Assembly (NCBI GenBank): GCA_002269645.1
Contig: NIVC01000106.1
Location: forward strand, 620,001-684,000
Direction: 5' to 3'
Source of the DNA: Macrostomum lignano
Lineage: Eukaryota
Length of the DNA: 64,000 nucleotides
The notes under the pieces were generated by a model. That model ran no database searches and was not told the origin of the DNA. It saw only the letters and a list, made by a program, of their open reading frames with translations. Position 1 is the stretch's first letter; each line of letters starts with the position of its first letter. Below, one piece after another: positions 6,670 to 63,750 of the stretch. The translations under genes were made by a program, and so were the position numbers.

Positions 6670-6995
6670 GGCCAAAGCTGCAGCGCCCGTCCATGGTTAC
6701 CATCCTGCGCCGGCGGCGACTTCAACTGGCGGGCCACGTGATTCGGGCCGAGGGCTACTGCCCCCAACCTGTTCAGGACGTCCTGCTGCTCACCTTGCAG
6801 GGTCCGTTCAGGCGGGGTCAGGCCCGACCCGTCGATACGTGGACTGCCTGTTGTGCGACACTGCAATGGGGCGCCCGACACTGCCAACGGAGCGGGCTTC
6901 GTTCGCTTCCAGGATCTACGGCGTGCCATCTGACGTGCCCTGCTCTAACTGTGACCTATGCTTGTGGGGCTGCTTATTTTGTTGTTGTTGTTATT
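6670..6995 (+). mobile_element. 5'-truncated 3' end of an RTE-like LINE
   Basis: Encodes RRRRLQLAGHVIR...VQDVLLLTLQGPFRRG, homologous to the 38200 region of the large LINE; ends in a (TTG)n tail. Confidence 0.75.
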
Positions 6996-12327: not shown

Positions 12328-12424
12328 GACTTTGTCGTGATGTGTTAGGATTGAAGAAAAACTGTTTTTGTTTCAGAAACTTGTTCCTAACGGTTTTTAT
12401 TTCAAGGCTTTTCATTGACATTCG

Positions 12425-12495
12425 CGCATTGGTCAGCCCGATTGGTTGGGAATAACAGTACGACTTTAAATCCAAGCTCTCTTCGCATTGGCTGT
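12425..12495 (-). promoter_or_regulatory. Three CCAAT boxes upstream of the GPCR start codon
   Basis: ATTGG occurs three times on + (CCAAT on -) about 100-170 bp upstream of the proposed ATG at 12327. Motif match only. Confidence 0.3.
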
Positions 12496-12523
12496 AGTAT
12501 AGCTCGTATCTTGTTAACCTACT

Positions 12524-13047
<524 letters not shown>

Positions 13048-13219
13048 ACAACAAATCGAGGATGCAGCAGGATGGCTTGTTTTAGGGTTTAGATATTTTA
13101 TTTATTGGCATAAAAATATGTACTGAGTCTGTACCTCCAATGTTAGCCATAGACGGGTTTGCTGCCTTGAGCTATTAGGATTTTTCGATCGTACCTCCAC
13201 CCAGGAACACGCAGCAGCC

Positions 13220-31394: not shown

Positions 31395-31950
31395 AATGCT
31401 GTCTAACACTTCTAATTCTAGCTGTCTAACATTTGATTCTAACTATCTAACATTTCTAATTCCAGCTGTCTAACAATTAATTATAACTATCTAACATTTC
31501 TGATTCTAGCTGTCTAACATTTGATTCTAACTATCTAACAGTTCTGATTCTAGCTGTCTAACATTTGATTCTAACTATCTAACAGTTCTAATTCTAGCTG
31601 TCTAACAATTAATTATAACTATCTAACATTTCTGATTCTAGCTGTCTAACATTTGATTCTAACTATCTAACATTTCTGATTCTAGCTGTCTAACATTCGA
31701 TTCTAACTATCTAACAGTTCTGATTCTAGCTGTCTAACATTTGATTCTAACTATCTAACAGTTCTAATTCTAGCTGTCTAACAATTAATTATAACTATCT
31801 AACATTTCTGATTCTAGCTGTCTAACATTTGATTCTAACTATCTAACATTTCTGATTCTAGCTGTCTAACAATTAATTATAACTATCTAACATTTCTGAT
31901 TCTAGCTGTCTAACATTCGATTCTAACTATCTAAAAGTTCTGATTCTAGC
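31395..31950. repeat. 22-bp minisatellite with 44-bp dimer structure (TCTAACATTTGATTCTAACTA / TCTAACAGTTCTGATTCTAGCTG)
   Basis: Alternating subunits seen directly. Confidence 0.92.
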
Positions 31951-32519
31951 TATTAAAAATGGGACTATGACTTTCTATTGAGTAATTCTAATTCCAGCTA
32001 ACATCGAAAAAGCTGCATTATAAAGCAGACTAGCTGACTAAAGTGTTTTTTCGTCTTCTTTTTTTCTCATCCAAGAATGAATAGCCGTGTTGGCACTCAG
32101 CTTACCTCTTCAGCTGCTTTACAATTGGCCTTCTACAAGAAGGCTTTCTCATTAGCGAATTCCCAGCCGAGAAGGCTGTTGGACCTCCGCACCGTAAACA
32201 TAAGCAAGAGCTCCTAATGCTGAAGCGTTGCCATAACAACCCGCAGACAAGAGAGCCTAAACATAGGCTTGGAAGTTTTCTTCCTTTGCACTTCCAAATC
32301 GCGCGACGGAATGCATAAATATTTGAGCTAATTAAACAGACCTAACTGAGTCTGCCTAACGCGCGGGGTTTAACTCGCCAAGAGGGACTTTGCTGACAAT
32401 CCAACTACGAGCTACAAAATTTTTTTCTCTCCTCTTCGCATCAACTAACGCACAACTACATTGAGAACTGTGTACAAAATTGAGGCTAACAATTTATTGC
32501 CAAAGTTTTTTGTGGGAAT

Positions 32520-33830
32520 AGTCCTACGTCAGTCATTGGGAACAGACCCCGATGTTCAGTAGAACCGTCCTACGTCAGTCATTGGGAACAGACCCCGATG
32601 TTCAGTAGAACTGTCCAATGTCAGTCATTGGAAACAGACTCCGATGTTCAGTAGAACTGTCCAATGTCAGTCATTGGGAACAGACCCCGATGTTCAGTAG
32701 AACCGTCCTACGTCAGTCATTGGGAACAGACCCCGATGTTCAGTAGAACTGTCCAATGTCAGTCATTGGGAACAGACCCCGATGTTCAGTAGAACCGTCC
32801 TACGTCAGTCATTGGGAACAGACCCCGATGTTCAGTAGAACTGTCCAATGTCAGTCATTGGAAACAGACTCCGATGTTCAGTAGAACTGTCCAATGTCAG
32901 TCATTGGAAACAGACCCCGATGTTCAGTAGAACTGTCCAATGTCAGTCATTGGGAACAGACCCCGATGTTCAGTAGAACTGTCCAATGTCAGTCATTGGG
33001 AACAGACCCCGATGTTCAGTAGAACTGTACAATGTCAGTCATTGGAAACAGACTCCGATGTTCAGTAGAACTGTCCAATGTCAGTCATTGGAAACAGACC
33101 CCGATGTTCAGTAGAACTGTCCAATGTCAGTCATTGGGAACAGACCCCGATGTTCAGTAGAACTGTCCAATGTCAGTCATTGGGAACAGACCCCGATGTT
33201 CAGTAGAACTGTCCAATGTCAGTCACTGGGAACAGACTCCGATGTTCAGTAGAACTGTCCTACGTCAGTCATTGGAAACAGACTCCGATGTTCAGTAGAA
33301 CTGTCCTACGTCAGTCATTGGAAACAGACTCCGATGTTCAGTAGAACTGTCCTACGTCAGTCATTGGAAACAGACTCCGATGTTCAGTAGAACCGTCCTA
33401 CGTCAGTCATTGGAAACAGACTCCGATGTTCAGTAGAACTGTCCTACGTCAGTCATTGGAAACAGACTCCGATGTTCAGTAGAACCGTCCTACGTCAGTC
33501 ATTGGAAACAGACTCCGATGTTCAGTAGAACCGTCCTACGTCAGTCATTGGAAACAGACTCCGATGTTCAGTAGAACTGTCCTACGTCAGTCATTGGAAA
33601 CAGACTCCGATGTTCAGTAGAACCGTCCAATGTCAGTCATTGGGAACAGACCCCGATGTTCAGTAGAACCGTCCAATGTCAGTCATTGGGAACAGACCCC
33701 GATGTTCAGTAGAACCGTCCAATGTCAGTCATTGGGAACAGACCCCGATGTTCAGTAGAACTGTCCAATGTCAGTCATTGGGAACAGACCCCGATGTTCA
33801 GTAGAACTGTCCAATGTCAGTCATTGGGAA
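32520..33830. repeat. 46-bp tandem satellite, about 28 copies
   Basis: Period 46 (GTCCTACG at 32521 and 32567); unit TCAGTCATTGGGAACAGACCCCGATGTTCAGTAGAACTGTCCAATG; no unique spacers. Confidence 0.97.
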
Positions 33831-33840
33831 TCATTGGCGA

Positions 33841-33872
33841 TCTTTTAATGTGAAGACTAAATTTATTGCATG
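33841..33872 (+). other. Spliced-leader (SL) exon-like sequence at the 5' end of the LINE
   Basis: TCTTTTAATGTGAAGACTAAATTTATTGCATG matches 28/32 nt of the 3' part of the Macrostomum lignano SL as I recall it (TCTCTTACTGCGAAGACTCAATTTATTGCATG). It ends in ATG like flatworm SLs and is not followed by a GT donor. Confidence 0.7.
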
Positions 33873-36032
33873 TAAATGCCGCTACCTCTAAGTGGTCAGG
33901 CGGTGAGCCGCTCTTAACTGCTGCGGCGGCCAACAGCGGCAGGACCAAGCGGGGGCAGCGAAGCGAGCGTCGGCGTGAGCGAAATCGACGCGGTCGGCAA
34001 CGTGGTGCTGCCCGTCGAGCTGCTGCCGCTCTGGCCCATATTGATCCTTTGGGTGGTGCCAGGGACCGAGAGGCTCATTTACATCGAGCCCCAGCTGTAC
34101 CACAGGGCACGCTTCGGGTCGGGACGCTGAATCGCCGCACTCTCAAGGCCGCCTGGCGGAGAGGGGCTCTGGCAAAGCTAGCGCACGACCTAAGCTGTGA
34201 CGTCTTCGCATTGCAGGAGGTATCTATCAGGGCTGATACGGGGCTTCACTGTGAGGATCTGGGCGCCGGATGGACCCTTTAATATACATCAGCAGACCAA
34301 CGAGGCCGTAGAGGAGTTGGAGCGCTGGTCGGACCGAGGCTGCAGCAGAGCTGTCACTGCGTCTCTCTGTCCCCTCGGCTGCTCCGGGTCGACGTTCGGC
34401 TTCGCGGCCGGAACGCTCGCCTGTTCTGTGCGTACGCGCCTCCTGCCAAACGCCCTGACGAGGCTCAAGAATTCTTTGAGCAGCTCTCGGTACAGTTGGA
34501 GGAAACGGCGCAGCGTGATACATTGATAATCCTCGACCTGAACGCGGTTTAGCGTAGGTCCGAGTGGTCACTGTTCGTCACACCGCGTGAGAACGGCAAC
34601 ACCGGAGCGCTGGAGGACTTCCTAGAGAGGCAGGACATGGTGTCGGCCAACACCCGCTTCCGCAAGACGCTAGGCAGGCTCGCAAATTTTTTTGGGCTGC
34701 AAGCGCAGGCGGCGGAAAGCGCGTGGCCGGAATGCAAAACGGAGGCAGGCACAGCTCGATCATGTGCTGGTGCGCTTCCTCGAGCGCCGCCGCGTCGTCA
34801 ATTGCCGCGCCATCACGCCGCTTGCTCTGCGGTCCGATCATCGACTCCTCGTCTGCGACCTTCGTCGTCGTCACAATCCGCTCTATCGTCCACCGAAGCG
34901 GCCACCGCGGCGCTACTACCGCGCGCTCAGGGACGCCAACACGCACAGCCGCTTTGCTAGCGCTTTCATCACTGCGCTCGGCGGCAAGCGTGGAGGTGCC
35001 GAGTACGCCGAGGTGTGCGCTGCAGTTCGAGCCGCCGCGGAACAAGCAGTCCCGCTCTAGACCGGCCTAGAGTGAGCAGCCGGTATGGCAATACGACCCC
35101 ACGATTCGGCAAGCGAGGGAAGAGCTGGAGCGACTCCGTTTGAGCAGGCGACCAACCCGCGAGGCAGAGGAGGCCTTGGCGGCTGCCCATTTACAGCACA
35201 AGCAGGCTGCTGTTGATGACACCATTCGGGCCGTCTCTGCCGCTGGGCCTGATGCCAGAGGCCGCGTGGTCTGGTCGGCTATCAATGCTCTGACAGGGCG
35301 AAAGCGGTGCATTCCGCTAAACCTGGCAGGCGACTCTGCGGACGAGCGCAGGAAAGAGCTGCGTGAATTCTTCGCCACCATTGTCAACGCGCTGCCACCA
35401 CCGCTGCCAGAGAGTCTGACGCTGCCGCCGGAGATGCCGTTGCCCGCAGAGGAGAGCTTCAGCCTAGCACCAGTCAGCACAGCCGACGTTGTGAGGCTCG
35501 CCCAACAGTCACAGGGCGGGAAAGCGCTGGGTCCAGACGAGGTGCGCATCGAGGCGCTGCGCATCCACTGTGTGGTCAGTGAGGTCGTCAGAGTGATGAA
35601 TCGCGTGCTCTTCGGTGAGGAGGCACCCAATGAATGGACCACGGTGCACATCGTCGCAGTTCCTAAGAAGCCGGGCACCACGAGGCTTGATGAGCATCGA
35701 GGTACCTGCCTTCAGTCCTGCGCTGCGAAGTTGTTCAACCGGATGCTGTTATCGCGGTTGCAGCCCGTGCTGGATCCGTACCTGCGTCCTGAGCAAAACG
35801 GCTTCCGGCCCCATCGCAGCACTGTGACACAAATCCTGGCTCTTTGGCGAGTCATCGAGGAAGCATGAATACGCCAGTCGATCCTGATTGTTGTCTTCAT
35901 ATATTAGATTTCAAGAAGGCATTCGACTCGGTCGTCAGGTCTGTGCTCCCAAAGGTGCTCCGTGCGTACAACGTGCCAGAGCTGCTCATTTCCGCCATCA
36001 TGGCGATGTACCATGATACGAAAGCTGCTGTT

Positions 36033-36337
36033 TGTGGCGGCCAGACTGTGCGACCGGCAGCACCAGTGCAGCCGCACTGGAAACCCCCCCCCCCGCGTAC
36101 CTCTGTCTAGCTGAGGTGGGGTGGTGGCGCACCGCGCTAGCCGGCTCGCTAAGCCAGGGGGGTTGGCGTAGCCAATCACGCCACGCCACATGTGCGCACC
36201 TCCCTCGGCCACTCAATAATCTCGCTATGCATATAATGTATGTATAAATATTAATGTATGTATAAATATACGCGCAATGCAGTGCAACATCTTTGCTGCC
36301 ATTCCATCTATTGAACTAATTAAGGCCTTCCGCCTCA
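36033..36337 (+). repeat. 5' LTR (305 bp)
   Basis: Differs from the 3' LTR by 1 substitution, poly-C length (11 vs 9) and one 18-bp unit. Confidence 0.92.
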
Positions 36338-37163
36338 TTGGTGAGCCCGACTCCCAGCGCGGAACGCTGGGCCTACCTGGTCGGCCCTGTGCGGTCCTGG
36401 CAGCCAACCGCCTTGGCCGACTGCAACGGCAGCACCGCAGCCCAGCAGCTCTGCAGCACAGCAGCCCAGCAGCACCGCAGCCCAGCAGCACCGCAGCCCA
36501 GCAGCCACAGCAGTACCCCGCAGCAACAATCGGCCAAGTCAGCCCGCCCCCCGGTAGCTCCTGGGGTCTCGCCTTTCGGCCCCGCGTTGGACCAACCAGC
36601 GCCACACGCTGCAACAAATTTTAGGTTAGCACCGCTGCTGCTAGCCTAACGTCCCCAGCCTCTGTGCAGGAGCTTCGACCCGGCTCACGGCGGCAACTGA
36701 CTGTCGATTGCTTCGGGTGTGGTCCGGCCGCGCGCCCCGGCTGCTTTCCGCGCCCGCCTGGCGCCCTGCCGCCACCTTCGGCGCCCGCCTGGCGCCCTGC
36801 TGCTGCCTTCGGCTCCCGCCTGGCGCCTTGCTGCTGCCTTCGGCGACCGTCTGGCGCCCTGCTGCTGCCATCGGCACCCTGCTGCCTTCGGCGCCCGCCC
36901 GGCGCCCGCTCGGCGACCTGCTGCCATCGGCGCTCGCCTCCGCGCCCCTGCTGCCATCGGCGCTCGCCTCCGCGCCCCTGCCGCCTGCGGCGCCCGCCTC
37001 CGCCTAGCGCCCCTGCCGCCTTCGGCGTCCAGCTGATTTCGGCGCCCGCTCTTCTGCAGCTCCGCGGTCTTCGGCGCCCGGCTTTCGGCGCCCGCTCCTC
37101 GGCACTCTCGCTGCCTCGGCTACCACCCGACGTTCGGGGCCTAGCTCGGTGCTGGGGGAGCTG

Positions 37164-37484
37164 TGTGGCGGCCAGACTGTGCGACCGGCAGCACCAGTGC
37201 AGCCGCACTGGAAACCCCCCCCCGCGTACCTCTGTCTAGCTGAGGTGGGGTGGTGGCGCACCGCGCTAGCCGGCTCGCTAAGCCAGGGGGGTTGGCGTAG
37301 CCAATCACGCCACGCCACATGTGCGCACCTCCCTCGGCCCCTCAATAATCTCGCTATGCATATAATGTATGTATAAATATTAATGTATGTATAAATATTA
37401 ATGTATGTATAAATATACGCGCAATGCAGTGCAACATCTTTGCTGCCATTCCATCTATTGAACTAATTAAGGCCTTCCGCCTCA
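37164..37484 (+). repeat. 3' LTR (321 bp)
   Basis: Direct repeat of 36033-36337 with one extra 18-bp TTAATGTATGTATAAATA unit. Confidence 0.92.
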
Positions 37485-38916
37485 TGTTTCAACATCGGAC
37501 GGCCTATCGGACTTCTTTGAGACATCCTCCGGGGTGCTTCAGGGTGCGTCAGGTTCGTTCTGGTGCTTGACTGGGTGCTGAGGACCGCTCTTCCTGCCAA
37601 CGACGACGGATTTCTGTTGCGGCGACGCGTAGGTCGACGTCGACTGGAGAGGCGACTCAGCGTGCTTGGCTACGCCGACGACCTCGCCCTGCTGTCCTGA
37701 AATGTCAAAAGCGCCCATAAACAGCTGGAAAAACTTGTTGCCGTTGCGGCGAGTGTCGGCTGGGTAGTCAACACGCAGAAGACTGTCGTGCTTTTCGTGC
37801 CGGACGAAATCGAGGCTGCAATTTTGTGCCAATGCGCAGATGGACAAGCGACGGAGCTTCCGTGTTGTCAGCAGTTCATCTACGCTGGCGGTCTGGTTCC
37901 CGGCGTCCATGAGGATCTGCGGCGTCACCGCGGACGTGCCTGGGTTGCCTTCCGTTCTTTGAGGGCAGTCTTGCAGTTTGAGGCCCTGCCTGACCGCCAG
38001 AGGGTGGCGCTGTTCCAGGCGGTGCTCGAGACCGTCTTGCTGTACAACGCTGAGATCTGGACGATGACGGACTCGCTCGAGCAACAAGTTGATGCGGTGC
38101 ACGCTGGCCTGCTGCACTTCGCCTTCAAGATGGACAAAAAGCGACTTTCTACTCCACTGGACTCCAGCTGGCAGGCCTCATCATCGAATCGTACTGTCTA
38201 CGACCGGTGGAGGAGGTGCTGCTGCTGACGCTGCAGGTGCCCTACCAGCGAGGGACAGGCGCGCACATGGCGTTTTGTCGACTGCCTGCTGCCTTTCTAA
38301 ATACCCTGACACCGTATTTTGTTGCTGCGGTCTGTCACTCATTTTGCTACGCAATCAATTTTTTCCTTCGCGTAAAGTTTGGATACACTTTCCTCAGCTA
38401 ACTCATATGGCCCTTGATGATCACCTGCAGTTTATTTGCTTCCCAATCAAACTCATAAAAATTTGAAGTGTATTTTATTAGGTCAGAGTATATAAGATAA
38501 AACTGCGATGGAAAAAAGCATGCAAAAGTGCCATAGCCGGTATGTATAGAAGCTGAATAAGTTACGGATGAGTGACTTTGCTCTGCCGTGTCGAACTGTG
38601 CAGCTCGAACTCACGTCGAGTCACTTGCCGTACCTCGAAGAACCCAATAGATGACGTGATATCTCTGAAAATTTAATTTAGAAACATATTTATAAATAGT
38701 ATTCGCGTATCGTATTGAAAACTACAGAAAAATAAGGCTGATGTCTGTCGACAAATCGATAATCTTCCTTACCCTCACATGTCACAGGACAATATGTGAA
38801 AAGTCGAACCTAGAGAATCCTTCTTTATTTTACGCCCTATTTAACCCACAATTCAGAGTACGAGTCAAATTTATTTGGGGCTCAATCACGAAGAATGGCT
38901 TATTGCTTGGGAAAAT

Positions 38917-41900
38917 CTAGCATATTAGGGCAACCTCCAACGGACTCTTGACGATGAGAGTCGGGGCCGCTGTACGGTCGTACACCCTGTGTGAGCCCGT
39001 GTCTGCTTGCCTTCTTGCTAGCGGCGGGTCGACTTTCGTCTCGACTTTCTGATGCCCTAATCAAACAAAGATATTGTAATTAATAGATCGAGCTTACCAA
39101 CTCCATAAGCTACCACATCGCAGAGTTCAAAAAGCGTTGTCAGGCTACTGTCATTGATTCTGCCTATGCGGACAGTAAGCTCGCTAGCCTGAGCACCCTG
39201 GCAGTTAAACGATTCTGCAACGCTCATGTCCATGCTGTCCACTCTGCTGCACAGTTGTCTGCCAGCCAGCACCTCAAAAAGTTGACAGTTGTTGTCAACT
39301 GGTGGCGACGATTCCGGCGAAGAGGAGGTCAAGCACGAGTCCAGAATGACCCGGCCAACTTTGACGTTGCGTCCAAACTGACCGCGCCAATCGAAATTCG
39401 CTGCTGCAACGTCTGCGTTGGAACTGAAATCTGACGAAAGGGACTCGCAAGCGGATGAGGATGCACTTTTCGATTTAGCGCCGTCTATCGAAGTCTGTCG
39501 GCAATTGATAAATGTCAACGGCTGAGAGTCTGGAAGAAGTGGGGACGCAAACAAAGCTGTAAAGAACTTTTGACGGGGGCGTACGCTGAGAGTAATTTAC
39601 GACGTATCAGTTCTACGACACTAAAATAAATCTGCTATGTCTACGACAAAATTTATAATGATAATAATAATAATTGATGAGAATTAACTAATAATGAAAT
39701 GAAATGTCACCTGTCCAAACGGGCAGATGTGCAACCGACAGCTATTGCGTGGCGCATTTGAAGGCTGCGTACGGCTTTTTCAGTCCATGGACTGAAGGTT
39801 GCCACAAAAATCCTCAATTACCCCACCTAATGTCATTTTACAGCTGGGTGATCTGAAGCAATGCAGAGTCAAGTGTCTAGCTCAAGGACACAAATTGTTC
39901 CGAGTTTGGTTAGGGTTAAGGATAGACCTTTCAGTAGTGATTCCGACGCTCTAACCACTAGGCTACAACCCCCCTACGACAAAGAGCCAGCGCACTCTTG
40001 CAAAATAAAAGATCCTTAACAATAAATCCACTAAGAGCTGAGGCATAGCAAGCTGGCAAGGAGAGGGGAGGGGCGAGGCCCCTTTCAAAAGGCTGACAAA
40101 AACGATGATACCCCATTGCAAGCTGTAGCTCCTTGGTGCTGCCACAGCTCCATCGACGGCGAACCCCCAAGGACCTGCTACTACAACAGATTTAAACAAC
40201 ATAATGTAGAATACTTCTAAAAAACAGGCACTCCATTTTCCACAACTTTAATTGCGAGTGGCATATTTAGTTATTCAGGAATGCTTTGTCGTTAAAAGTG
40301 CCGTCTCACAACTAGCACGACACTTGAACGTACCAGTGTCAAACACGCGAATCCCACAAACCGGTCCAGGGTAGTCGCAATTTTTCTCCACTTTCGACGG
40401 CGTCTTCGTCTCCGAGGCGTCGTCTGGACGCCGAACCCCGACTAGCAGGGAGCCGGTCTTGTCGCCGGAACAGTCGAAGATGCCCAGCGATCGGCCCAGC
40501 TGGTCCAGACGGCAATGCCGACTGGGCAGAGCGGCGTCCCAAGGCCGGGCAATCACGACGATTCCCTGCGGCAGGTGTCGGTCGACACTTTTAGCGGACG
40601 AGTTCAGCAAGGCGCCCTTGACCACCACACGTTGGAGACGGACTGGCCGATTGAACTGGCCGAGCCAGGACCAGCGGAATGGGTCTCGGCGAGGACAGTC
40701 GATCGGATAGCCGCTGTACACTTTCCAGCAGTCGCTGTCATCTTTTATGACTTCGTCAACGCCCTCTGATCCGTCGGATTTTGTCAAGCGTCGTCGACTC
40801 GAACCTGGGATGCTCGAGGGGCTGGCGGCAGCAGCCGTGGGACGAGAAGCTTTTGTCAGTGGCCGGCTGTTTTCAATCCATTTGCAGGATTGGAAGGCCA
40901 GATTGGCTGTGGGTAAAATTTTCATTGCTTTTAGATTTTTTCATCATTGAGATTTCTCAGAGAAAAAGCTTTCGAGTGAAATTCAAGATCTGAGACCGAG
41001 ATCCGGGATCTGAAAATGAAATTTAGAAACAGAGAGTGTGACAGGATTTAAAGATGAGATTCAAGATCCAAATATGAGATTTTTGAGAATCTATTTTGAA
41101 TGTGGGAAGGTTAAGAATCTGTAAGTGAGATACGCTCGTAAAAGTCCAAGGTATATCATACTCGTAGTATTTTTCCCCAACTTCGAACGGTCTTTCAGAT
41201 TATCATAGCAAGCAGACAACCATTTTAACCAGTTTCAATAAATCACTTGTGAACGAAGTAAAATATAAAATTTTCAAATTTTTAAACTTTAAAACTTTAA
41301 ATTTCAAATTTTTTAACTTCAAACTTCAAGTTTTTAATCTACTATCAACAATATTAGTGACGATTTTGACACTATTGACGTTGATATAGCGAGGCTTATT
41401 GATTTGATGTTTACGGATCGAACCACTAGCTACGAAGACATCCACAAGCCCTCGCTTCGATATTAGGTTAGAAGATGAGCTCATGGCTTTTGCCGACGGC
41501 TACGAAGCTACTAAGAAAGCTGCTTGAATAATCAAAACGTTTCAACAAAAGACCATAGACTTATTTGACCAGAAAACGTTTCAAAACAAGACCATAGACT
41601 TATTTGACAAGAAAACGTTCCAACAAAAGACCATAGACTTATTTGACCAGAAAACGTTTCAAAACAAGACCATAGACTTATTTGACAAGAAAACGTTCCA
41701 ACAAAAGACCATAGACTTATTTGACCAGAAAACGTTCCAATACAAGACCATAGACTTATTTGACCGGAAAACGTTCCAATACAAGACCATAGACTTATTT
41801 GACCGGAAAACGTTCCAACAAAATACCATAGACTAATTATTTGAACGGAAAACGTTCCAATACAAGACCATAGACTTATTTGACCGGAAAACGTTCCAAT

Positions 41901-42521
41901 ACAAGACCATAGACTTATTTGACCGGAAAACGTTCCAACAAAATACCATAGACTAATTATTTGAACGGAAAACGTTCCAATACAAGACCATAGACTTATT
42001 TGACCGGAAAACGTTCCAATACAAGACCATAGACTTATTTGACCGGAAAACGTTCCAATACAAGACCATAGACTTATTTGACCGGAAAACGTTCCAATAC
42101 AAGACCATAGACTTATTTGACCGGAAAACGTTCCAACAAAATACCATAGACTAATTATTTGACCGGAAAACGTTCCAATACAAGACCATAGACTTATTTG
42201 ACCGGAAAACGTTCCAATACAAGACCATAGACTTATTTGACCGGAAAACGTTCCAATACAAGACCATAGACTTATTTGACCGGAAAACGTTCCAATACAA
42301 GACCATAGACTTATTTGACCGGAAAACGTTCCAATACAAGACCATAGACTTATTTGACCGGAAAACGTTCCAACAAAAGACCATAGACTTATTTGACTAA
42401 TAGTGGGGAATAATAATGCGAAAAAATCAATCTTTCGATAGTGCTGCTTACAGAATTCCGGCATTGTAGCTGAGACAAGCATCAAGCTGATGCTAAGAAG
42501 CATCACATCGGTCAGAATCAT
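38917..42521 (-). CDS. Secreted protein with two divergent F5/8C / F-type-lectin-like domains, about 413 aa
   Basis: Exons (-): 42521-42452 (signal peptide MILTDVMLLSISLMLVSA), 40906-40334, 39556-39098, last exon 39056-38917 (alternatives: 39048-38900, or read-through to the stop at 39057). All phase-1. WLGQFNRPVRLQRVVV, WRGQFGRNVKVGRVIL and FELCDVVAYG resemble discoidin/FTP strands. Confidence 0.6.
39720..39974 (-). mobile_element. tRNA-derived SINE (family 1), copy C
   Basis: Reverse complement of the head (GGTTGTAGCCTAGTGGTTAGAGCGTCGGA), core (CACCCAGCTGTAAAATG) and tail (AGCTGTCGGTTGCACATCTGCCC). Confidence 0.85.
41530..42398. repeat. 39-bp minisatellite (GACCATAGACTTATTTGACCGGAAAACGTTCCAATACAA)n
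   Basis: Tandem unit with occasional 42-bp variants; lies in intron 1 of the double-domain gene. Confidence 0.95.
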
Positions 42522-44193: not shown

Positions 44194-51423
<7,230 letters not shown>

Positions 51424-57270: not shown

Positions 57271-58079
57271 TTCGACGGCTACTAATAGGAAAATGTCCAC
57301 TGATGTCACCAGAATGTCCCCTCACGTGCGAAGCGTCTATAATTGGCACTATAAATGCCTATTTAATTAGGAAGCTAAAATGCCTAAAACACTTGCATAT
57401 TGGCAATCTGCAACCCGAGATTCCCAGTTTAAAGTTTACAATTTTATCAAATCCCCATAAAAATTTTTGACGCCCACAAGATCAAACTTTCCCTGCTCTT
57501 GTCGATGAACAATCTAGTCTAGAAAAGTAGGTAGGGAGTGGAAGTATGACACACCGGCAGTCAGCACAGCCATCAGACTATTTAGGGTGTCCTAACAAAA
57601 CAGCAGCAGTTTTAAAACAGTGAGTGGTAAAGCCGCATGAAGCAGAGAGGAGGGGTTGGGCCAGGGGGCCCGGGGTGGTCATAAAATCCATAATAAGCGT
57701 GTCGCCAAGGGCGCCGCCACTTGAAGAAGCGAGGAGAGAGAAGAGAGCGAGTGACTGAGCTTACAGCCGCCTCCATCAAATATATTATTATACACATGCA
57801 TTTTCGCACACTGCAGGAACTGGTTGACCACAACTGAGCAGTATAAAATGCAGTATATTGCTTGCTCACAGCGTCGGCACAATATTATTAGTGCCCAGTG
57901 CGATCATGTAAAAAATAAAAGCCACCCACCCACTAAAGGGATTTTTATCGCTTAATGACACGCCGGATTTATAAGCCGCTAACTTTATTAGACCACTTGA
58001 AGTTGACCGCCTAATTACTGGATTGTACCTGAGAAACACACGGGACTGCGAAACCATGCTGGGCTTTTTCATGAGTTCT

Positions 58080-59945
58080 TCCCCTCCCCTGTTCCTTCCG
58101 CTCCCTACCCCTCTGTTCCTTCTGCTCCCTCCCCTCTGTTCCTTCCGCTCCCTCCCCTCTGTTCCTTCTGCTCCATCCCCTCTGTTCCTTCCCCCCTCCC
58201 CTCTGTTCCTTCCGCTCCCTCCCCTCTGTTCCTTCCGCTCCCTCCCCTCTGTTCCTTCCGCTCCCTCCCCTCTGTTCCTTCTGCTCCATCCCCTCTGTTC
58301 CTTCCGCTCCCTCCCCTCTGTTCCTTCCGCTCCCTACCCCTCTGTTCCTTCTGCTCCCTCCCCTCTGTTCCTTCCGCTCCCTCCCCTCTGTTCCTTCTGC
58401 TCCATCCCCTCTGTTCCTTCCCCCTCCCTCTGTTCCTTCCGCTCCCTCCCCTCTGTTCCTTCCGCTCCCTCCCTCTGTTCCTTCCCCCTCCCTCTGTTCC
58501 TTCCGCTCCCTCCCCTCTGTTCCTTCCGCTCCATCCCCTCTGTTCCTTCCGCTCCCTCCCCTCTGTTCCTTCCGCTCCCTCCCCTCTGTTCCTTCCGCTC
58601 CCTCCCCTCTGTTCCTTCCGCTCCCTCCCCTCTGTTCCTTCCGCTCCCTCCCCTCTGTTCCTTCCGCTCCCTCCCCTCTGTTCCTTCCGCTCCCTCCCCT
58701 CTGTTCCTTCTGCTCCATCCCCTCTGTTCCTTCCGCTCCCTCCCCTCTGTTCCTTCCGCTCCCTACCCCTCTGTTCCTTCTGCTCCCTCCCCTCTGTTCC
58801 TTCCGCTCCCTCCCCTCTGTTCCTTCTGCTCCATCCCCTCTGTTCCTTCCCCCCTCCCCTCTGTTCCTTCCGCTCCCTCCCCTCTGTTCCTTCCGCTCCC
58901 TCCCCTCTGTTCCTTCCCCCCTCCCCTCTGTTCCTTCCGCTCCCTCCCCCCTGTTCCTTCCGCTCCATCCCCTCTGTTCCTTCCGCTCCCTCCCCTCTGT
59001 TCCTTCCGCTCCCTCCCCTCTGTTCCTTCCGCTCCCTCCCCTCTGTTCCTTCCGCTCCCTCCCCTCTGTTCCTTCCGCTCCCTCCCCTCTGTTCCTTCCG
59101 CTCCCTCCCCTCTGTTCCTTCCGCTCCCTCCCCTCCTTTCCTTTCCCCTCTCTCCCGTGTTCCTTCCGCTCCCTCCCCTATGTTCCTTCCGCTCCCTCCC
59201 CTCCGTTCCTTCCGCTCCCTCCCCTATGTTCCTTCCGCTCCCTCCTCTCTGTTCCTTCCGCTCCCTCCCCTCTGTTCCTTCCGCTCCCTCCCCTCTGTTC
59301 CTTCCGCTCCCTCCCTCCGTTCCTTCCGCTCCCTCCCCTCTGTTCCTTCCGCTCCCTACCCCTCTGTTCCTTCTGCTCCCTCCCCTCTGTTCCTTCCGCT
59401 CCCTCCCCTCTGTTCCTTCCGCTCCCTCCCCTCTGTTCCTTCCGCTCCCTCCCCTCTGTTCCTTCCGCTCCCTCCCCTCTGTTCCTTCCGCTCCCTCCCC
59501 TCTGTTCCTTCCGCTCCCTCCCCTCTGTTCCTTCCGCTCCCTCCCCTCTGTTCCTTCCGCTCCCTCCCCTCTGTTCCTTCCGCTCCCTCCCCTCTGTTCC
59601 TTCCGCTCCCTCCCCCTCCTTTCCTTTCCCCTCTCTCCCGTGTTCCTTCCGCTCCCTCCCCTATGTTCCTTCCGCTCCCTCCCCTCCGTTCCTTCCGCTC
59701 CCTCCCCTATGTTCCTTCCGCTCCCTCCTCTCTGTTCCTTCCGCTCCCTCCCCTCTGTTCCTTCCGCTCCCTCCCCTCTGTTCCTTCCGCTCCCTCCCCT
59801 CCGTTCCTTCCGCTCCCTCCCCCTCTGTTCCTTCCGCTCCCTCCCCTCTGTTCCTTCCGCTCCCTCCCCTATGTTCCTTCCGCTCCCTACTCCTCCTTTC
59901 CTTTCCCCTCTCTCCCGTGTTCCTTCCGCTCCCTCCCCTCCTTTT
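58080..59945. repeat. 23-bp polypyrimidine minisatellite (CCCTCCCCTCTGTTCCTTCCGCT)n, about 1.9 kb
   Basis: Seen directly; explains the 650-aa Pro/Ser/Leu ORF. Confidence 0.97.
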
Positions 59946-60312
59946 CGATTTGTTTACCGAAACGAAAAAAAGTAACGTTTGTTTGGAAAGAATGCCAACT
60001 GAATAATTAATGCCATAATTAGGAGTTTATATCGATAAAAATCAATCAAATCTGTATTAATATAATTTTAAATTTTTACAATAGTCGCATAGCAAAATAC
60101 GATTCACAATGGCACCATTGATTAATATTGAGATACAAAAAGCAGCATATAATACTGCTATTGAGAATTTATCTATTGGTACAAGATACTCGTAAAAAAA
60201 GATTAGATTCCTAAACTAGTAATTGGCACTACTGTAAGTAAGAAGCAGAAATTACAAGTAAATTGCAATCGTAAATGAATATTTTTTTGAAAAATCTTAA
60301 TAAATGAAATAA

Positions 60313-63300
60313 TCAAAATTTCACTACGGCCTCCTCTGCAGCCCCGAACAAAGACTTCAAATAGCGGTCGAACCGAACCAGCAGCTGCCAGGCGTCTCGC
60401 GACAAAGACGAGGATTCGCCGTTTGCTTCGATGACGCGAAAAGTCAGCAAATCCAATGTTGGTAGAGATTTTATTGACAAGCGTAGCTGGCAATTTGGGG
60501 CCATTTCAAATCCGTAGTGCCAGCATTCATTAGCCGTAGCATTAGCCAATTCATTAGCCGTAGTATTAGCCAATTCATTAGCCGTAGTATTAGCCAATTC
60601 ATTAGCCGTAGCATTAGCCAATTCATTAGCCGTAGCATTAGCCAATTCATTAGCCTGAGAATTAGCCAATTCATTAGCCCGAGAATTAGCCTGCTGGTTA
60701 GCCACCGACAGCCGGAACCGTTCCAGTCGACCAGCGGAAACAGCGGAACCAGGCGGGCACCGGATGAACGAAGCGCCGGGCAAATCCAGCGAGCACCAGC
60801 AACCGTTGCTAAGCACGCCCGACTCAACCGGCGTCCTTAGCAACGGGCGGAGTAGATCGGCTAAGCCCAGCCGGATCGAGCTCAGCTGAGCAGTCAGCGG
60901 GCGGCACTCTATCCCGGATGTGCAGTCGAGACGGATGGCCAGACGAAACGGCAGCGGCCGATGACAGGCAACGCGCAGACCGATGTTCACCTCAACGAGG
61001 CTTTCCGAGGCTGACTGATCCGACGGAGTCGGCAGTCGGAGCCGTGGCAGATGGACAGAGTCTACGGTTGCTATGCGGCTGGCTTCCCCGGCCAGATCGT
61101 CCTCGCTAGCAGCTTCCAAGCCTGCTGGCGTCGAGTCCGACAGGTCGGCGGTGTCAGGATGAGTGCTGAATGTCAGGTCCACGGCCAGCAGGTCGGATTC
61201 GTTGAGCAGCTCGGAGGTCCGACGGCACTGAGGCGGGGACGGTTAGAGGCAAACGATGAGTTAGAATGACTATAAATAGCCTTGAATGACCAATAATGAC
61301 CTGATTACATGGATCATACATGACCCAGAATGATCATAAATGACCCAGAATGATCATACATGTCACATAATGATCATAAATGACCCAGAATGATCATACA
61401 TGACCCAGAATGATCATACATGACCCAGAATGATCATACATGACCCAGAATGATCATACATGGCCCAGAATGATCATACATGACCCAGAATGATCATACA
61501 TGACCCAGAATGATCATACATGACCCAGAATGATCATACATGACCCAGAATAATCATACATGACCTAGAATGATTATACATGACCTAGAATGATTATACA
61601 TGACCCACAATGATCATACATGACCCAGAATGATCATACATGACCCAGAATGATCATACATGACCCAGAATGATCATAAATGACCCAGAATGATCATACA
61701 TGACCCAGAATGATCATAAATGACCCAGAATGATTATAAATGACCCAGAATGATCATACATGACCCAGAATGACCCAGAACCAGTTAGCAAGTCCTCACC
61801 GTCAGTCTAACGGGCACAATGAGCACAGTCTCAGCGTCACTGTTTGTCAATTCGCAATCCAAGCCAGACTGCTCAGTCAGCAGGTTGAGCTCAACAGGCG
61901 GCTCAGCCAGCAGTCGCATCTCTGGCATTGCCTGACTTGCTGTGGGCGCAGCAACCGCCAGACTAGTTCGAGTCCGATGACTCATAGCACCCGATTGATC
62001 GGTGATTACAAAGTTCTTCTGAGCAGCAGAATCCACTCCAACGGCGGTGGAGGACTCGAACACAATCGAAGCTAATTTCTGAGTAGGCATATAACTAGCC
62101 AGTGAGTAGTATAGCTGAGCTCGAGATCTCACATCGATATCAACGTACAGATCGAAGTCGCCAGGCCCAGCCCAGTGCGCCAGCACTCCGCACAGATTCG
62201 CCAACAAGCCGGCATCAGTTTGCAATCGATGCCAATGAGTTCGAAACACTGACCGACTCACGTCCAGAATGCGGTGGCCGCACAGCCAGAGGTTCGAATC
62301 TTCAATACTGGTAGCTGGGGGAGAGTTGTACTGATCGGAATTGATTGAGGCTAACTGAGCCAGGCAGTCTACGATTGGCTGAGGCGGTATCCGACTGTAC
62401 ATGGCTGCCCGGTTCAGGATGGTCATATAGCGGCCCAGGGACTGCCTGTCCGCCGCATTCTCAGCGCTGTTGATGGCTACCCAATCGCACAGCTCTGAGT
62501 AGGCCTTAATAATTGATTAATTGAGTAATTATTCATTTAGGGTGGTTAGGGCATCTGAGAGATTTAGAAAATTAGTGACTGATTTTTACGAGTGACAGAA
62601 TTTTATGAAGCCGAAAGTGACAGAATTTGATGAAGCCGAAAGTGACAGAATTTGGAGAAGCCGAGAGTGACAGAATTTGATGAAGCTGAGAGTGACAGAA
62701 TTTGAAGGAGCTGAGAGTGACAGAATTTGGAGAAGCCGAGAGTGACAGAATTTGATGAAGCTGAGAGTGACAGAATTTGAAGGAGCTGAGAGTGACAGAA
62801 TTTGGAGAAGCCGAGAGTGACAGAATTTGATGAAGCTGAGAGTGACAGAATTTGAAGGAGCTGAGAGTGACAGAATTTGAAGGAGCTGAGAGTGACAGAA
62901 TTTGAAGGAGCTGAGAGTGACAGAATTTGAAGGAGCTGAGAGTGACAGAATTTGATGAAGCTGAGAGTGAGAGAATTTGGAGAAGCCGAGAGTGACAGAA
63001 TTTGGAGAAGCCGAGAATGACAGAATTTGAAGGAGCTGAGAGTGACAGAATTTGAAGGAGCTGAGAGTGACAGAATTTGAAGGAGCTGAGAGTGACAGAA
63101 TTTGAAGGAGCTGAGAGTGACAGAATTTGATGAAGCTGAGAGTGACAGAATTTGGAGAAGCCGAGAGTGACAGAATTTGGAGAAGCCGAGAGTGACAGAA
63201 TTTGAAGGAGCTGAGAGTGACAGAATTTGATGAAGCTGAGAGTGACAGAATTCGGAGAAGCTGAGAGTGACCAGAATTTGATGAAGCCGAAAGTGACAGA

Positions 63301-63750
63301 ATTTTATGAGGCTGAGATTAACAAAATTTGATGAAGCCGAAAGTGACAGAATTCGGAGAAGCCGAGAGTGACAGAATTTGATGAAGCCGAAAGTGACAGA
63401 ATAACTGAATAAGGCAATTTGAATGACAAAGGAATGCAGTTTCAATGAAGCAGAGTGACAAAAAAGCCAGTGTAGACTGCCGCTCACCTGATAGGGCAAA
63501 TCCGAGTCTGGAAAGTCCTGAGTGACGCTGTCCAGAAAGTCCAACAGATGCTCTGCAAACGCCAGGTTGGCATTGATCATGCTGATGAGCATCTGCCGAA
63601 TATCGTCGCCTAGCACACTGGCGTGGTGTCTGGCAAACACTGCGTACAGGCTGGCAAAGAACGCCACGGCGTGTCGGCCCCGACCGCCAGATTTCTGAGC
63701 TGGCCGGCTGAGACTGACCAGAGTGCCCATCAGGCAGGCTGAGGCCTCGT
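60313..63750 (-). CDS. AP5B1: AP-5 adaptor complex beta-1 subunit-like, 3' part (5' end beyond or at the window edge)
   Basis: Exons (-): 63750-63488, about 62504-61800 (acceptor uncertain, 62504 or 62492), 61227-60313. DIDVRSRAQLYYSLASYMPTQKLASIV matches the AP5B1 D.D.RD.AR.YY.LL..L...KL pattern, and the C-terminal DAWQLLVRFDRYLKSL resembles the AP5B1 end (from memory). Confidence 0.72.
60530..60690. repeat. 24-bp repeat (ATTAGCCAATTCATTAGCCGTAGC)n inside the last AP5B1 exon, encoding (ANELANAT)n
   Basis: About 6 in-frame, stop-free copies. Confidence 0.9.
61305..61780. repeat. 20-bp minisatellite (ATGACCCAGAATGATCATAC)n in an AP5B1 intron
   Basis: Seen directly; fills most of intron 61228-61799. 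Confidence 0.95.
62590..63410. repeat. 25-bp minisatellite (GCTGAGAGTGACAGAATTTGAAGGA)n in an AP5B1 intron
   Basis: Seen directly; fills most of intron 62505-63487. Confidence 0.95.

What the first reader, a model, noticed from the sequence alone, without database searches (positions are those of the whole stretch)
33841..38290. LINE retrotransposon whose 5' end is a spliced leader: candidate SL-trans-spliced retroelement
Seen: the RTE-like element starts immediately after TCTTTTAATGTGAAGACTAAATTTATTGCATG, with satellite DNA directly upstream and no GT donor after the terminal ATG, so this is not an SL RNA gene. Recalled knowledge: this matches 28/32 nt of the Macrostomum lignano SL, and flatworm SLs end in ATG. 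Inference: the element RNA was SL trans-spliced and then fully reverse transcribed. Trans-splicing could then give the LINE a capped, unit-length RNA cut out of read-through transcripts, the role HDV-like ribozymes play for R2 and some RTE elements. This differs from NeSL/SLACS/CRE elements, which insert into SL genes and use a restriction-like endonuclease; this element has an APE domain. An alternative is an RT template switch onto SL RNA, like U6-L1 chimeras.
Basis: partly seen in the sequence, partly recalled or inferred. Interest (0 to 1): 0.85.

Follow-up and report, generated by a model that had tools for sequence, protein, structure and literature searches.

The report
Spliced-leader-tagged dead RTE LINE copy
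An old, broken copy of a flatworm RTE-type LINE has 35 bases of the host's spliced leader in place of its normal 5' end, which most likely records one retrotransposition of a trans-spliced LINE mRNA and does not by itself show a routine LINE strategy.

Summary
Window 33838-33872 matches the published Macrostomum spliced leader (SL) at 30 of 35 bases without gaps. It is unique in the window, and shuffled sequence never exceeds 24/35. All five differences are G/C to A/T changes, as expected for decay.

The piece ends exactly at the SL exon end. It carries no GT donor, intron or Sm site, and it sits 3 nt upstream of the start codon (33876) of an RTE-like LINE. The LINE ends near 38330, not 38290. 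It is dead: 5 in-frame stops, at least 6 frameshifts, an 84-nt deletion and a nested LTR element.

Ten related elements from metagenome and Logan contigs show the normal 5' end of this clade. It consists of tandem 16-17-nt units ending in TTKCAG, which fits the published M. lignano trans-splice acceptor motif, followed by a conserved hairpin that ends at the ATG. None of them carries an SL, and the window copy lacks both units and hairpin. The closest family has a CAG exactly where the SL joins here.

Best reading, about 0.6: one LINE mRNA was trans-spliced at an AG 3 nt before its ATG and then retrotransposed. Routine use of trans-splicing by the family is untested. Precedents exist in Schistosoma mansoni and in dinoflagellates.

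The parts
32521..33830 (.). 46-bp satellite, 28.5 copies. This is the upstream flank and is not part of the element.
   Evidence: It has no significant similarity to the SL.
33831..33837 (+). 7-nt filler TCATTGG at the 5' junction. It repeats 33822-33828.
   Evidence: satellite register breaks after 33830.
33838..33872 (+). SL-derived segment, nt 11-45 of the 45-nt Macrostomum SL. It matches at 30/35, and all 5 differences are G/C to A/T.
33873..33875 (+). TAA, the only remnant of the LINE 5' UTR between the SL end and the start codon.
   Evidence: Alignment A2. L005/L016 have CAG|ATA at this place.
33876..38300 (+). Degenerate single ORF of an RTE-like LINE. The start ATG is at 33876, the APE region at about 34030-35015, the RT at about 35640-36032 plus 37489-37960, and YADD at 37671-37682. 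In-frame stops are at 34280, 34550, 35058, 35866 and 37698. There are at least 6 frameshifts and an 84-nt C-terminal deletion between CTGCTG repeats.
   Evidence: and 96/97.
36033..37484 (+). Nested non-coding LTR element that interrupts the RT. The LTRs are 36033-36338 and 37164-37484, 93.5% identical, with TG...CA ends. The target duplication TGTT is at 36029-36032 and 37485-37488. A PBS-like TGGTGAGCCCG follows the 5' LTR.
   Evidence: Removing it restores ...KAAV|STSDGLSD, as in the relatives.
38301..38330 (+). LINE 3' UTR and decayed (TTG)n tail: CCTGACACCGTATTTTGTTGCTG.
   Evidence: Homologous to L016, L014 and L001...GTATTTTG(TTG)n.
38333..38343 (+). Possible downstream target-site duplication TGTCACTCATT. 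It matches TGTCAGTCATT at 33815-33825 at 10/11. The evidence is weak.
   Evidence: 9 of 300 shuffles do as well. The upstream copy lies 12 nt from the start of the SL piece.

Best explanation
This is a dead, old insertion of an RTE-type (APE + RT) LINE in a macrostomid-like flatworm genome. Its own 5' UTR has been replaced by nt 11-45 of the host spliced leader.

Most likely sequence of events:
1. A LINE-containing transcript was SL trans-spliced at an AG 3 nt upstream of the LINE start codon. That AG lies in the 3' arm of the family's 5' hairpin.
2. The resulting SL-capped mRNA was used as the template for target-primed reverse transcription by the LINE machinery. Copying ran to within 10 nt of the SL 5' end.
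3. The cDNA integrated at the edge of a 46-bp satellite, with 7 nt of filler.
4. The copy then decayed and received a nested LTR element.

Shown directly:
- the identity of the SL piece
- the exact exon-end junction
- the absence of SL-gene parts
- the position relative to the ATG
- the normal 5' architecture of the relatives
- the CAG at the same place in the closest family

Inferred: the trans-splicing event itself, and that the SL and the LINE arrived in a single retrotransposition event.
For: 1. The SL match is 30/35, is unique and is far beyond chance. All 5 differences are G/C to A/T (P about 0.009 if they were placed at random). This fits decay of a genomic copy and argues against a cDNA or assembly artefact.
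2. The piece stops exactly at the SL exon's last base. The real SL RNA gene continues GTAAGACACCG..., then a stem-loop, an Sm-like AUUUUUAG and a third stem-loop (L015). The window continues TAA ATG CCG CTA CC, which aligns with the N-terminal coding DNA of the relatives (A2).
3. The ATG at 33876 is the family start codon. ATGCCGC is invariant in 7 sequences, and the proteins begin MPxPPG.
4. The closest family is L005/L016, 78% nt identity over 2.8 kb. It reads GGTGCAG|ATA ATG CCG, so an AG sits exactly at the window's junction. L012 and L004 also have an AG 1-7 nt before the start-codon position.
5. The LINE has the family 3' UTR and (TTG)n tail, so it is a retrotransposed unit.
6. Precedents exist. 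Genome-encoded SL exons are merged to transposable elements in S. mansoni, and the authors offered the same interpretation (PMC5832876). Dinoflagellate retrogenes carry SL relics.
Against: - There is a single copy, and no other copy of the family occurs in the window. The source genome could not be searched.
- The parental sequence with an AG at -3 is inferred from a 78%-identical relative. 7 of the 10 relatives have no AG in the last few bases before the ATG.
- The target-site duplication is weak (about 3% of shuffles, offset 12 nt). It is therefore not proven that the SL and the LINE arrived together.
- None of the 10 relatives carries an SL (L016 by reading).
- 5/35 mismatches is on the high side if decay is only 3-5% (P 0.006-0.03).
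- The host species, and so its exact SL, is not verified. A host lectin exon found no close protein in the database.
Confidence: 0.6

Rival explanations
1. RT template switch. During reverse transcription, the LINE RT stalled at the base of the 5' hairpin. It then jumped onto unspliced SL RNA at GTAA microhomology next to the donor site, or onto the free SL exon intermediate. This would give a U6-L1-like chimera.
For: - SL RNA is abundant.
- The relatives have a stable hairpin just before the ATG that could stall the RT.
- The hairpin's 3' arm in L004 and L006 reads GTGTAAGT / GTGTAAAT, which resembles the SL donor region G|GTAAG.
- The window reads GCATGTAAATG, one G short of GCATG+GTAA+ATG (alignment).
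- L1-RNA chimeras are well documented (PMC11838501, listed; not read).
Against: - It needs the switch to land at the exon end and, in addition, a later 1-nt deletion. Trans-splicing gives the observed junction with no extra step.
- U6-type chimeras carry the small RNA through to its own 3' end, joined to LINEs truncated at variable points. Here the whole SL intron half is absent and the LINE ORF is complete at its 5' end.
Confidence: 0.15
2. The SL is a heritable 5' module of a subfamily. An SL-tagged copy became a master element, and the SL is a fixed part of that subfamily's 5' end. It might serve as an internal promoter or translation element. The window copy would then be an ordinary full-length member.
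For: - Nothing in the window excludes it.
- The junction keeps the whole ORF.
- The SL AUG would be in frame with the LINE AUG in an L005/L016-type junction (AUG AUA AUG).
- From my own knowledge: in Ascaris, SL sequences act as intragenic promoter elements of SL RNA genes.
Against: - No relative has an SL (L016 by reading).
- All 10 relatives keep the hairpin, and 7 also keep the unit array, which implies selection for that 5' UTR.
- In this copy the SL AUG is followed at once by TAA.
- The idea still requires an original trans-splicing or switching event.
Confidence: 0.12
3. Independent adjacency. The LINE inserted next to or into a pre-existing SL sequence (an SL gene, SL pseudogene or SL-tagged retrocopy), or a later rearrangement joined the two.
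For: - The target-site duplication is not secure.
- The 3' flank begins CGGTCTGTCACT, which matches SL nt 11-22 at 10/12. In a shuffle test 84 of 3000 shuffles did as well.
Against: - Against real windows of this sequence, the 3' flank's score against the SL gene is ordinary. It is 27, against a mean of 18.8 and sd of 4.6, and it is not among the top windows.
- There is no Sm site or SL stem-loops at either flank, and Rfam finds nothing.
- It needs two exact coincidences: the target nick at the SL exon end, and LINE truncation exactly 3 nt before its ATG.
- The element has an APE, not the restriction-like endonuclease of the SL-gene-specific LINEs.
Confidence: 0.06
4. Chance or convergent resemblance. 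The motif is just the family's own 5' UTR, or satellite sequence, that happens to look like the SL.
For: The family 5' units (for example TGAATTATTTGCAG) vaguely resemble the SL 3' end (CAATTTATTGCATG).
Against: - The 5' UTRs of the relatives do not match the SL better than shuffles of themselves do (226-1999 of 2000 shuffles as good).
- The satellite does not match either.
- The window piece scores 52, and 0 of 2000 shuffles reach that.
- The 22 bases outside the unit-like part match at 17/22 (P about 4e-7).
Confidence: 0.01

Closest known systems
Genome-encoded SL exons fused to transposable elements in Schistosoma mansoni (Boroni et al. 2018, PMC5832876)
   Same: Both are flatworms. In both, an SL exon sequence is encoded in the genome, lies outside SL RNA genes and is merged to transposable elements. 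The authors suggested trans-spliced, retro-transcribed elements.
   Different: In S. mansoni there are only table entries (6 loci). The junctions and the element families were not analysed, and assembly chimerism was not excluded. Here the junction, the element clade, the normal 5' end of the relatives and the decay state are all worked out.
Dinoflagellate retrogenes with relict DinoSL (Slamovits and Keeling 2008 from my own knowledge)
   Same: Retroposition of an SL-trans-spliced RNA leaves a DNA-encoded SL at the 5' end of the new copy.
   Different: Those are host genes mobilised in trans, often with tandem truncated relics from repeated cycles. Here the tagged RNA is the LINE's own mRNA and there is a single relic. 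I tested whether the relatives' 16-17-nt tandem units are such relics and found no significant similarity.
SL-gene-specific LINEs: NeSL-1, SLACS, CRE1/2, CZAR (own knowledge)
   Same: A LINE lies physically next to SL sequence.
   Different: Those elements insert at a fixed site inside SL RNA genes in tandem arrays and use a restriction-like endonuclease. Here there is no SL gene remainder at either flank, the endonuclease is of the APE type, and the relatives sit in unrelated flanks.
U6-L1 and other snRNA/LINE chimeric retrocopies made by template switching (PMC11838501, listed but not read; own knowledge)
   Same: A small spliceosomal-type RNA sequence is joined to the 5' side of a LINE.
   Different: The SL part stops at the splice donor and not at the RNA's 3' end. 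The LINE is not truncated within its ORF.
R2, RTE and L1Tc elements processed by 5' HDV-like ribozymes (Eickbush 2010; Ruminski 2011; Sanchez-Luque 2011; own knowledge)
   Same: The problem is the same: a promoter-less LINE has to be cut out of a co-transcript and translated.
   Different: Rfam finds no ribozyme in the window or in 8 related loci. These elements instead carry acceptor-like tandem units and a hairpin at the start codon.

Membership tests
SL-tagged retrocopy (retroposed SL-trans-spliced RNA) | A DNA-encoded SL exon sequence lies outside an SL RNA gene, with no donor, intron or Sm site. | tested here: met
   30/35 to the SL. The sequence after it is LINE coding DNA, not GTAAGACACCG.... 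Rfam finds nothing.
SL-tagged retrocopy (retroposed SL-trans-spliced RNA) | The SL is joined at exactly its exon 3' end to the downstream transcript. | tested here: met
   ...TTATTGCATG|TAAATGCCGC. A shift of up to two bases (the shared T and G) is possible if the parent read TGTAA.
SL-tagged retrocopy (retroposed SL-trans-spliced RNA) | The junction corresponds to a 3' splice acceptor (AG) in the unspliced parent. | tested here: inconclusive
   The parent is not available. The closest family, L005/L016, has CAG at that exact place. 7 of the 10 relatives have no AG in the last few bases before the ATG.
SL-tagged retrocopy (retroposed SL-trans-spliced RNA) | Retroposition hallmarks bracket SL plus body: a 3' tail and a target-site duplication. 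| tested here: inconclusive
   The (TTG)n tail is present. The candidate 11-bp duplication matches at 10/11, but 3% of shuffles do as well and it is offset.
RTE clade of non-LTR retrotransposons | A single ORF of about 1000 aa with an N-terminal APE and an RT, in a unit of about 3.2-3.3 kb. | tested here: met
   RVT_1 E 4.9e-20 in the window copy. The relatives carry PF03372 plus PF00078, are 930-1050 aa and lie on 3.27-3.33 kb contigs. The window's APE region is 83% identical to M. lignano P0018.
RTE clade of non-LTR retrotransposons | A very short 3' UTR that ends in a simple-repeat tail, not poly(A). | tested here: met
   GTATTTTG(TTG)n in L001, L013, L014, L016 and the window; (TTA)n in L003.
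RTE clade of non-LTR retrotransposons | The RT falls inside the RTE clade in a phylogeny. | not tested
   No reference LINE set was available in these tools.
SL-gene-specific LINEs (NeSL/SLACS/CRE/CZAR) | Insertion at a fixed site inside an SL RNA gene, with the rest of the gene at the 3' flank. | tested here: not met
   The 3' flank against the L015 SL gene scores 27, against a window-wide mean of 18.8 and sd of 4.6. No Sm site or stem-loops are present.
SL-gene-specific LINEs (NeSL/SLACS/CRE/CZAR) | A restriction-like endonuclease C-terminal to the RT, and no APE. | tested here: not met
   An N-terminal APE is present. The ORF ends shortly after the RT/thumb region.
snRNA-LINE template-switch chimeras (U6-L1 type) | The small RNA is copied to its own 3' end and fused to LINEs truncated at variable points. 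| tested here: not met
   Only the SL exon part is present. The junction is at the donor site, and the LINE ORF is complete at its 5' end.
Ribozyme-processed LINEs (HDV-like) | A self-cleaving ribozyme fold at the 5' end of the element. | tested here: not met
   No Rfam family matches at E<=1 in L001, L003-L008 or L011, and none reaches the gathering score in the window. An undescribed ribozyme is not excluded.

The most novel reading that the evidence does not exclude
This clade of RTE LINEs, found in macrostomid flatworms and in relatives from marine metagenomes, may routinely depend on SL trans-splicing. Its conserved 5' arrays of 16-17-nt units each end in the host trans-splice acceptor motif (TTKCAG). 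The last unit is always changed to CAC and is locked into a hairpin that presents the AUG. These arrays would recruit the SL to read-through transcripts. That would give a promoter-less LINE a cap and a defined 5' end, doing the job that HDV-like ribozymes do for R2 and some RTEs. The window copy would be a fossil of that pathway.
Probability: 0.25. Interest if true: 0.8.

Novelty: new member of a known kind. Interest (0 to 1): 0.55.

Why it matters
If trans-splicing made this copy, it is sequence-level evidence that a metazoan LINE mRNA can be SL trans-spliced and still serve as a retrotransposition template. SL relics could then be used, as in dinoflagellates, to find and date retrocopies in flatworm genomes.

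The more useful lead is the 5' architecture found in the relatives: arrays of acceptor-like units followed by a hairpin at the start codon. It gives a concrete, testable hypothesis for how promoter-less RTE elements obtain a capped mRNA in trans-splicing animals. M. lignano has transgenesis (PMC5730564), so reporter tests are feasible.

If the copy is a one-off, it is a curiosity. It also warns annotators that genome-encoded SLs can mimic trans-splice sites or SL genes.

Tried and rejected
1. Tandem 5' units of the relatives as relict SLs from repeated splice and retropose cycles. The SL has an internal AG 17 nt from its end and the units are 17 nt long. Similarity to the SL was no better than shuffles, so I rejected this.
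2. The 46-bp satellite as an SL derivative (the SL is 45 nt). Not significant.
3. An SL RNA gene remainder at the LINE 3' flank. The shuffle test was marginal (84-276 of 3000), but the score is ordinary against real windows. Rejected.
4. A clean target-site duplication. Only a 10/11 match was found, offset from the SL piece. Unresolved.
5. More copies in the same genome. There are none in the window. The public collections reachable here hold only relatives of 78% nt identity or less.
6. Species identification through a host gene. The ERGIC-53-like lectin exon had no hit, although it is a real lectin domain.
7. Rfam ribozymes or SL families in the window and the loci. None found.
8. Run and sample accessions of the relatives in the literature. 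None found.
9. Literature on SL-LINE fusions in Macrostomum. None found.


Full report
**What is in the sequence**

Window 33838-33872 reads CGATCTTTTAATGTGAAGACTAAATTTATTGCATG. The published 35-nt Macrostomum lignano spliced leader (SL) is CGGTCTCTTACTGCGAAGACTCAATTTATTGCATG (PMC8629364). [quoted passage not shown] The window piece matches at 30/35 without gaps.

It is the only site in 64 kb, on either strand, with 22/35 or better. Fifty shuffles of the window never exceeded 24/35. The 21-mer core occurs once, against 0 expected.

The five differences are G3A, C7T, C11A, C14T and C22A. All run from G/C to A/T. If differences fell at random over the 35 positions, that would have P of about 0.009. 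This is what mutational decay of an old genomic copy looks like. It argues against cDNA contamination or an assembly chimera.

**It is not an SL RNA gene**

A scan of prokaryotic genome contigs for the SL turned up a real Macrostomum-type SL RNA gene. It sits on a contaminant contig of a 'Flavobacteriaceae' MAG (L015). The gene reads as follows:
- the 45-nt SL;
- the donor GTAAGACACCG;
- a stem-loop;
- an Sm-like AUAUUUUUAG;
- a last stem-loop.

It folds into the canonical three-stem SL RNA (z -4.4).

The window has none of this after the SL piece. It continues TAA ATG CCG CTA CC. From the ATG onwards this aligns with the N-terminal coding DNA of the related LINEs, and ATGCCGC is invariant in 7 sequences (A2).

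The LINE's 3' flank starts CGGTCTGTCACT, which looks a little like SL nt 11-22. Shuffle tests were marginal. Against all real 130-nt windows of this sequence, however, its score against the SL gene is ordinary: 27, against a mean of 18.8 and sd of 4.6. Rfam finds nothing in the window.

**The LINE**

Conceptual translation gives one ORF of about 995 aa across shifting frames. RVT_1 scores E 4.9e-20. The N-terminal third is 82-83% identical to an M. lignano Exo_endo_phos protein (P0018) and 75-80% identical to P0017.

Intact relatives are 930-1050 aa, carry PF03372 plus PF00078, and sit on 3.27-3.33 kb contigs that end in GTATTTTG(TTG)n. These are the structural hallmarks of the RTE clade. I did not run a phylogeny.

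The window copy is dead:
- in-frame stops at 34280, 34550, 35058, 35866 and 37698;
- at least six frameshifts;
- an 84-nt deletion between CTGCTG repeats at the C-terminus;
- a nested 1452-bp non-coding LTR element at 36033-37484.

The nested element has TG...CA LTRs that are 93.5% identical and a TGTT target duplication.

The element's 3' end is at about 38330 (CCTGACACCGTATTTTGTTGCTG), not 38290.

**Where the SL sits in the element**

The start codon is the ATG at 33876. The relatives start MPxPPG... at the aligned ATG. The SL therefore ends 3 nt (TAA) before the start codon.

**The normal 5' end of the clade**

I recovered ten related elements with readable 5' ends from ENA, JGI and Logan contigs:

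| Locus |
|---|
| L001 |
| L003 |
| L004 |
| L005 |
| L006 |
| L011 |
| L012, L013, L014 |
| L016 |

All ten have an 11-15-bp hairpin whose 3' arm runs into the ATG. Nine of them were folded, with z-scores of -2.4 to -4.8. L016 has the same hairpin sequence as L005. The stem shows compensatory changes:
- TTTGCAC/GTGCAAA in L011 and L014;
- TTTTCAC/GTGAAAA in L001;
- ACGCC/GGCGT in L012.

Seven of the ten (L001, L003, L005, L006, L011, L013, L016) also have tandem 16-17-nt units upstream. Each unit repeats the 5' arm of the hairpin.

In every lineage the array units end in ...TTKCAG, while the last, hairpin-forming unit ends in ...TTKCAC. TTGCAG and TTTCAG fit the top motif at M. lignano SL trans-splice acceptor sites, [T/C]TNCAG (PMC8629364).

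None of these loci contains anything SL-like. The best match in the loci scanned is 21/35, which is noise, and L016 reads as L005 does. The window copy has neither units nor hairpin (fold z -0.8). No other family-type 5' end exists in the window.

**The junction**

The closest family is L005/L016, at 78% nt identity over 2.8 kb. It reads ...TTATTTGCAC TCCG GTGCAG|ATA ATG CCG. The window reads ...TTATTGCATG|TAA ATG CCG. The SL therefore joins at exactly the position that follows a CAG in the nearest relative.

L004 has an AG 1 nt before its ATG. L012 has AGs in the last 7 bases before its (mutated) start-codon position. The other relatives have none in the last few bases before the ATG.

With an L005/L016-type parent, the SL AUG would be in frame with the LINE AUG (AUG AUA AUG).

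**Interpretation**

The simplest account is a three-step event. A LINE transcript was trans-spliced at that AG. The SL-bearing mRNA was then reverse transcribed by the LINE machinery to within 10 nt of the SL 5' end. It integrated at the satellite edge with 7 nt of filler (TCATTGG). This explains the exact exon-end junction without any extra event.

- **Template switching.** A switch onto unspliced SL RNA at GTAA microhomology (SL donor G|GTAAG, against hairpin arms GTGTAAGT and GTGTAAAT) is a real rival. It predicts GCATGGTAAATG and so needs an additional 1-nt deletion. It also does not explain why the SL intron half is absent, as U6-type chimeras would lead one to expect.
- **Independent adjacency.** This needs two exact coincidences.
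- **Chance resemblance.** This is excluded.

I could not show that the SL and the LINE arrived together. The best candidate target duplication is TGTCAGTCATT against TGTCACTCATT. About 3% of shuffles do as well, and it is offset 12 nt from the SL piece.

The idea is that trans-splicing gives the LINE a capped, unit-length RNA. This copy alone does not show that. It lacks the conserved 5' UTR, so it looks like a dead-end by-product. None of the ten relatives carries an SL.

The acceptor-like unit arrays are nevertheless a suggestive, independent hint that SL addition is part of the clade's biology. The CAG/CAC distinction is kept in seven elements from six divergent families. I rate that reading at about 0.25.

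The tempting idea that the 17-nt units are relict SL tails from repeated cycles failed a significance test.

**Novelty**

Boroni et al. 2018 listed genome-encoded SL exons in S. mansoni, six of them merged to transposable elements. They suggested 'trans-spliced retro-transcribed elements' but could not exclude assembly chimeras. Dinoflagellate retrogenes with SL relics are well known.

I found no report of SL-LINE fusions in Macrostomum, and none of this 5' UTR architecture. This is therefore a well-resolved new member of a known kind, with a new side observation attached.

**Limits**

- The source organism is not identified. The LINE's named relatives are all M. lignano proteins, but a host ERGIC-53-like lectin exon (Pfam E 3e-28) found no close protein. 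The species may be another macrostomid, and its own SL is unverified.
- The hosts of the metagenome and Logan relatives are unknown.
- Neither a genome-wide census nor RNA evidence could be obtained with these tools.

Noticed in passing
L001:1-80, L003:1-160, L005:1-50, L006:1540-1645, L011:1-105, L013:1-52, L016:1-108, also L004:100-134, L012:40-100, L014:170-203: There is a conserved 5' UTR architecture in this RTE-like clade. Tandem 16-17-nt units end in TTKCAG, which fits the M. lignano trans-splice acceptor motif. The last unit ends in CAC and forms an 11-15-bp hairpin, with compensatory changes, whose 3' arm runs into the start codon. I found no description of this in the papers searched.
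   Followed up: partly
L015:1590-1700 (JAGQZA010000190.1, 'MAG: Flavobacteriaceae bacterium HKST-UBA79'): This is a complete Macrostomum-type SL RNA gene: the 45-nt SL, a GTAAGA donor, an Sm-like site and three stems. It lies on a contig filed under a bacterial MAG. That contig is almost certainly flatworm contamination of the bin.
   Followed up: partly
window 36033-37484: A non-coding LTR element (TRIM-like) is nested in the LINE RT. The LTRs are 306 and 321 bp, 93.5% identical, with TG...CA ends and a TGTT target duplication. A PBS-like TGGTGAGCCCG is present. The interior consists of GC-rich 8-, 16- and 31-bp tandem repeats.
   Followed up: partly
window 4125-4438 (+), 11139-11337, 39689-39974 (-): There are three copies, about 74% identical, of a tRNA-derived SINE-like repeat with a (TTA)n-type tail. 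One sits in the intron after the lectin exon. Such SINEs are typical passengers of RTE-type LINEs; L003 has a (TTA)n tail.
   Followed up: no
window 6675-6930 (+): A 5'-truncated 3' fragment of a second RTE subfamily. It is 74% aa identical to P0002 over 50 aa, and 69-76% nt identical to the 3' ends of L012 and L001.
   Followed up: no
window 47945-47998 (+): A stretch resembles the donor-proximal half of the SL RNA gene: AGACACCGTAG-T-CAATAATCCA-CTATA against AGACACCGTTGATCCAATAATGGATCTATA. It is the second-best window-wide score against the SL gene (43, against a mean of 18.8), but only just above the tail of the distribution. It may be a decayed SL RNA pseudogene or it may be chance.
   Followed up: partly
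window 3386-4913 (-): Exons of an ERGIC-53/VIP36-like L-type lectin gene (Pfam Lectin_leg-like, E 3e-28). They have no close homologue in the 5.8-billion-protein index, although M. lignano UniRef proteins are in that index. The source species may therefore not be M. lignano.
   Followed up: partly
window 38270-38300 versus L016:3160-3245: The LINE's C-terminal coding end has an 84-nt deletion between two CTGCTG direct repeats. It joins ...VDCLL directly to the 3' UTR.
   Followed up: yes
window 31402-31951, 12299-13092, 41532-42521, 58000-60000, 62603-63730: The window is unusually rich in tandem arrays. These include a 44-bp satellite, a long trinucleotide run, and several minisatellites with strong strand skew. 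This is consistent with the repeat-rich genomes reported for Macrostomum.
   Followed up: no
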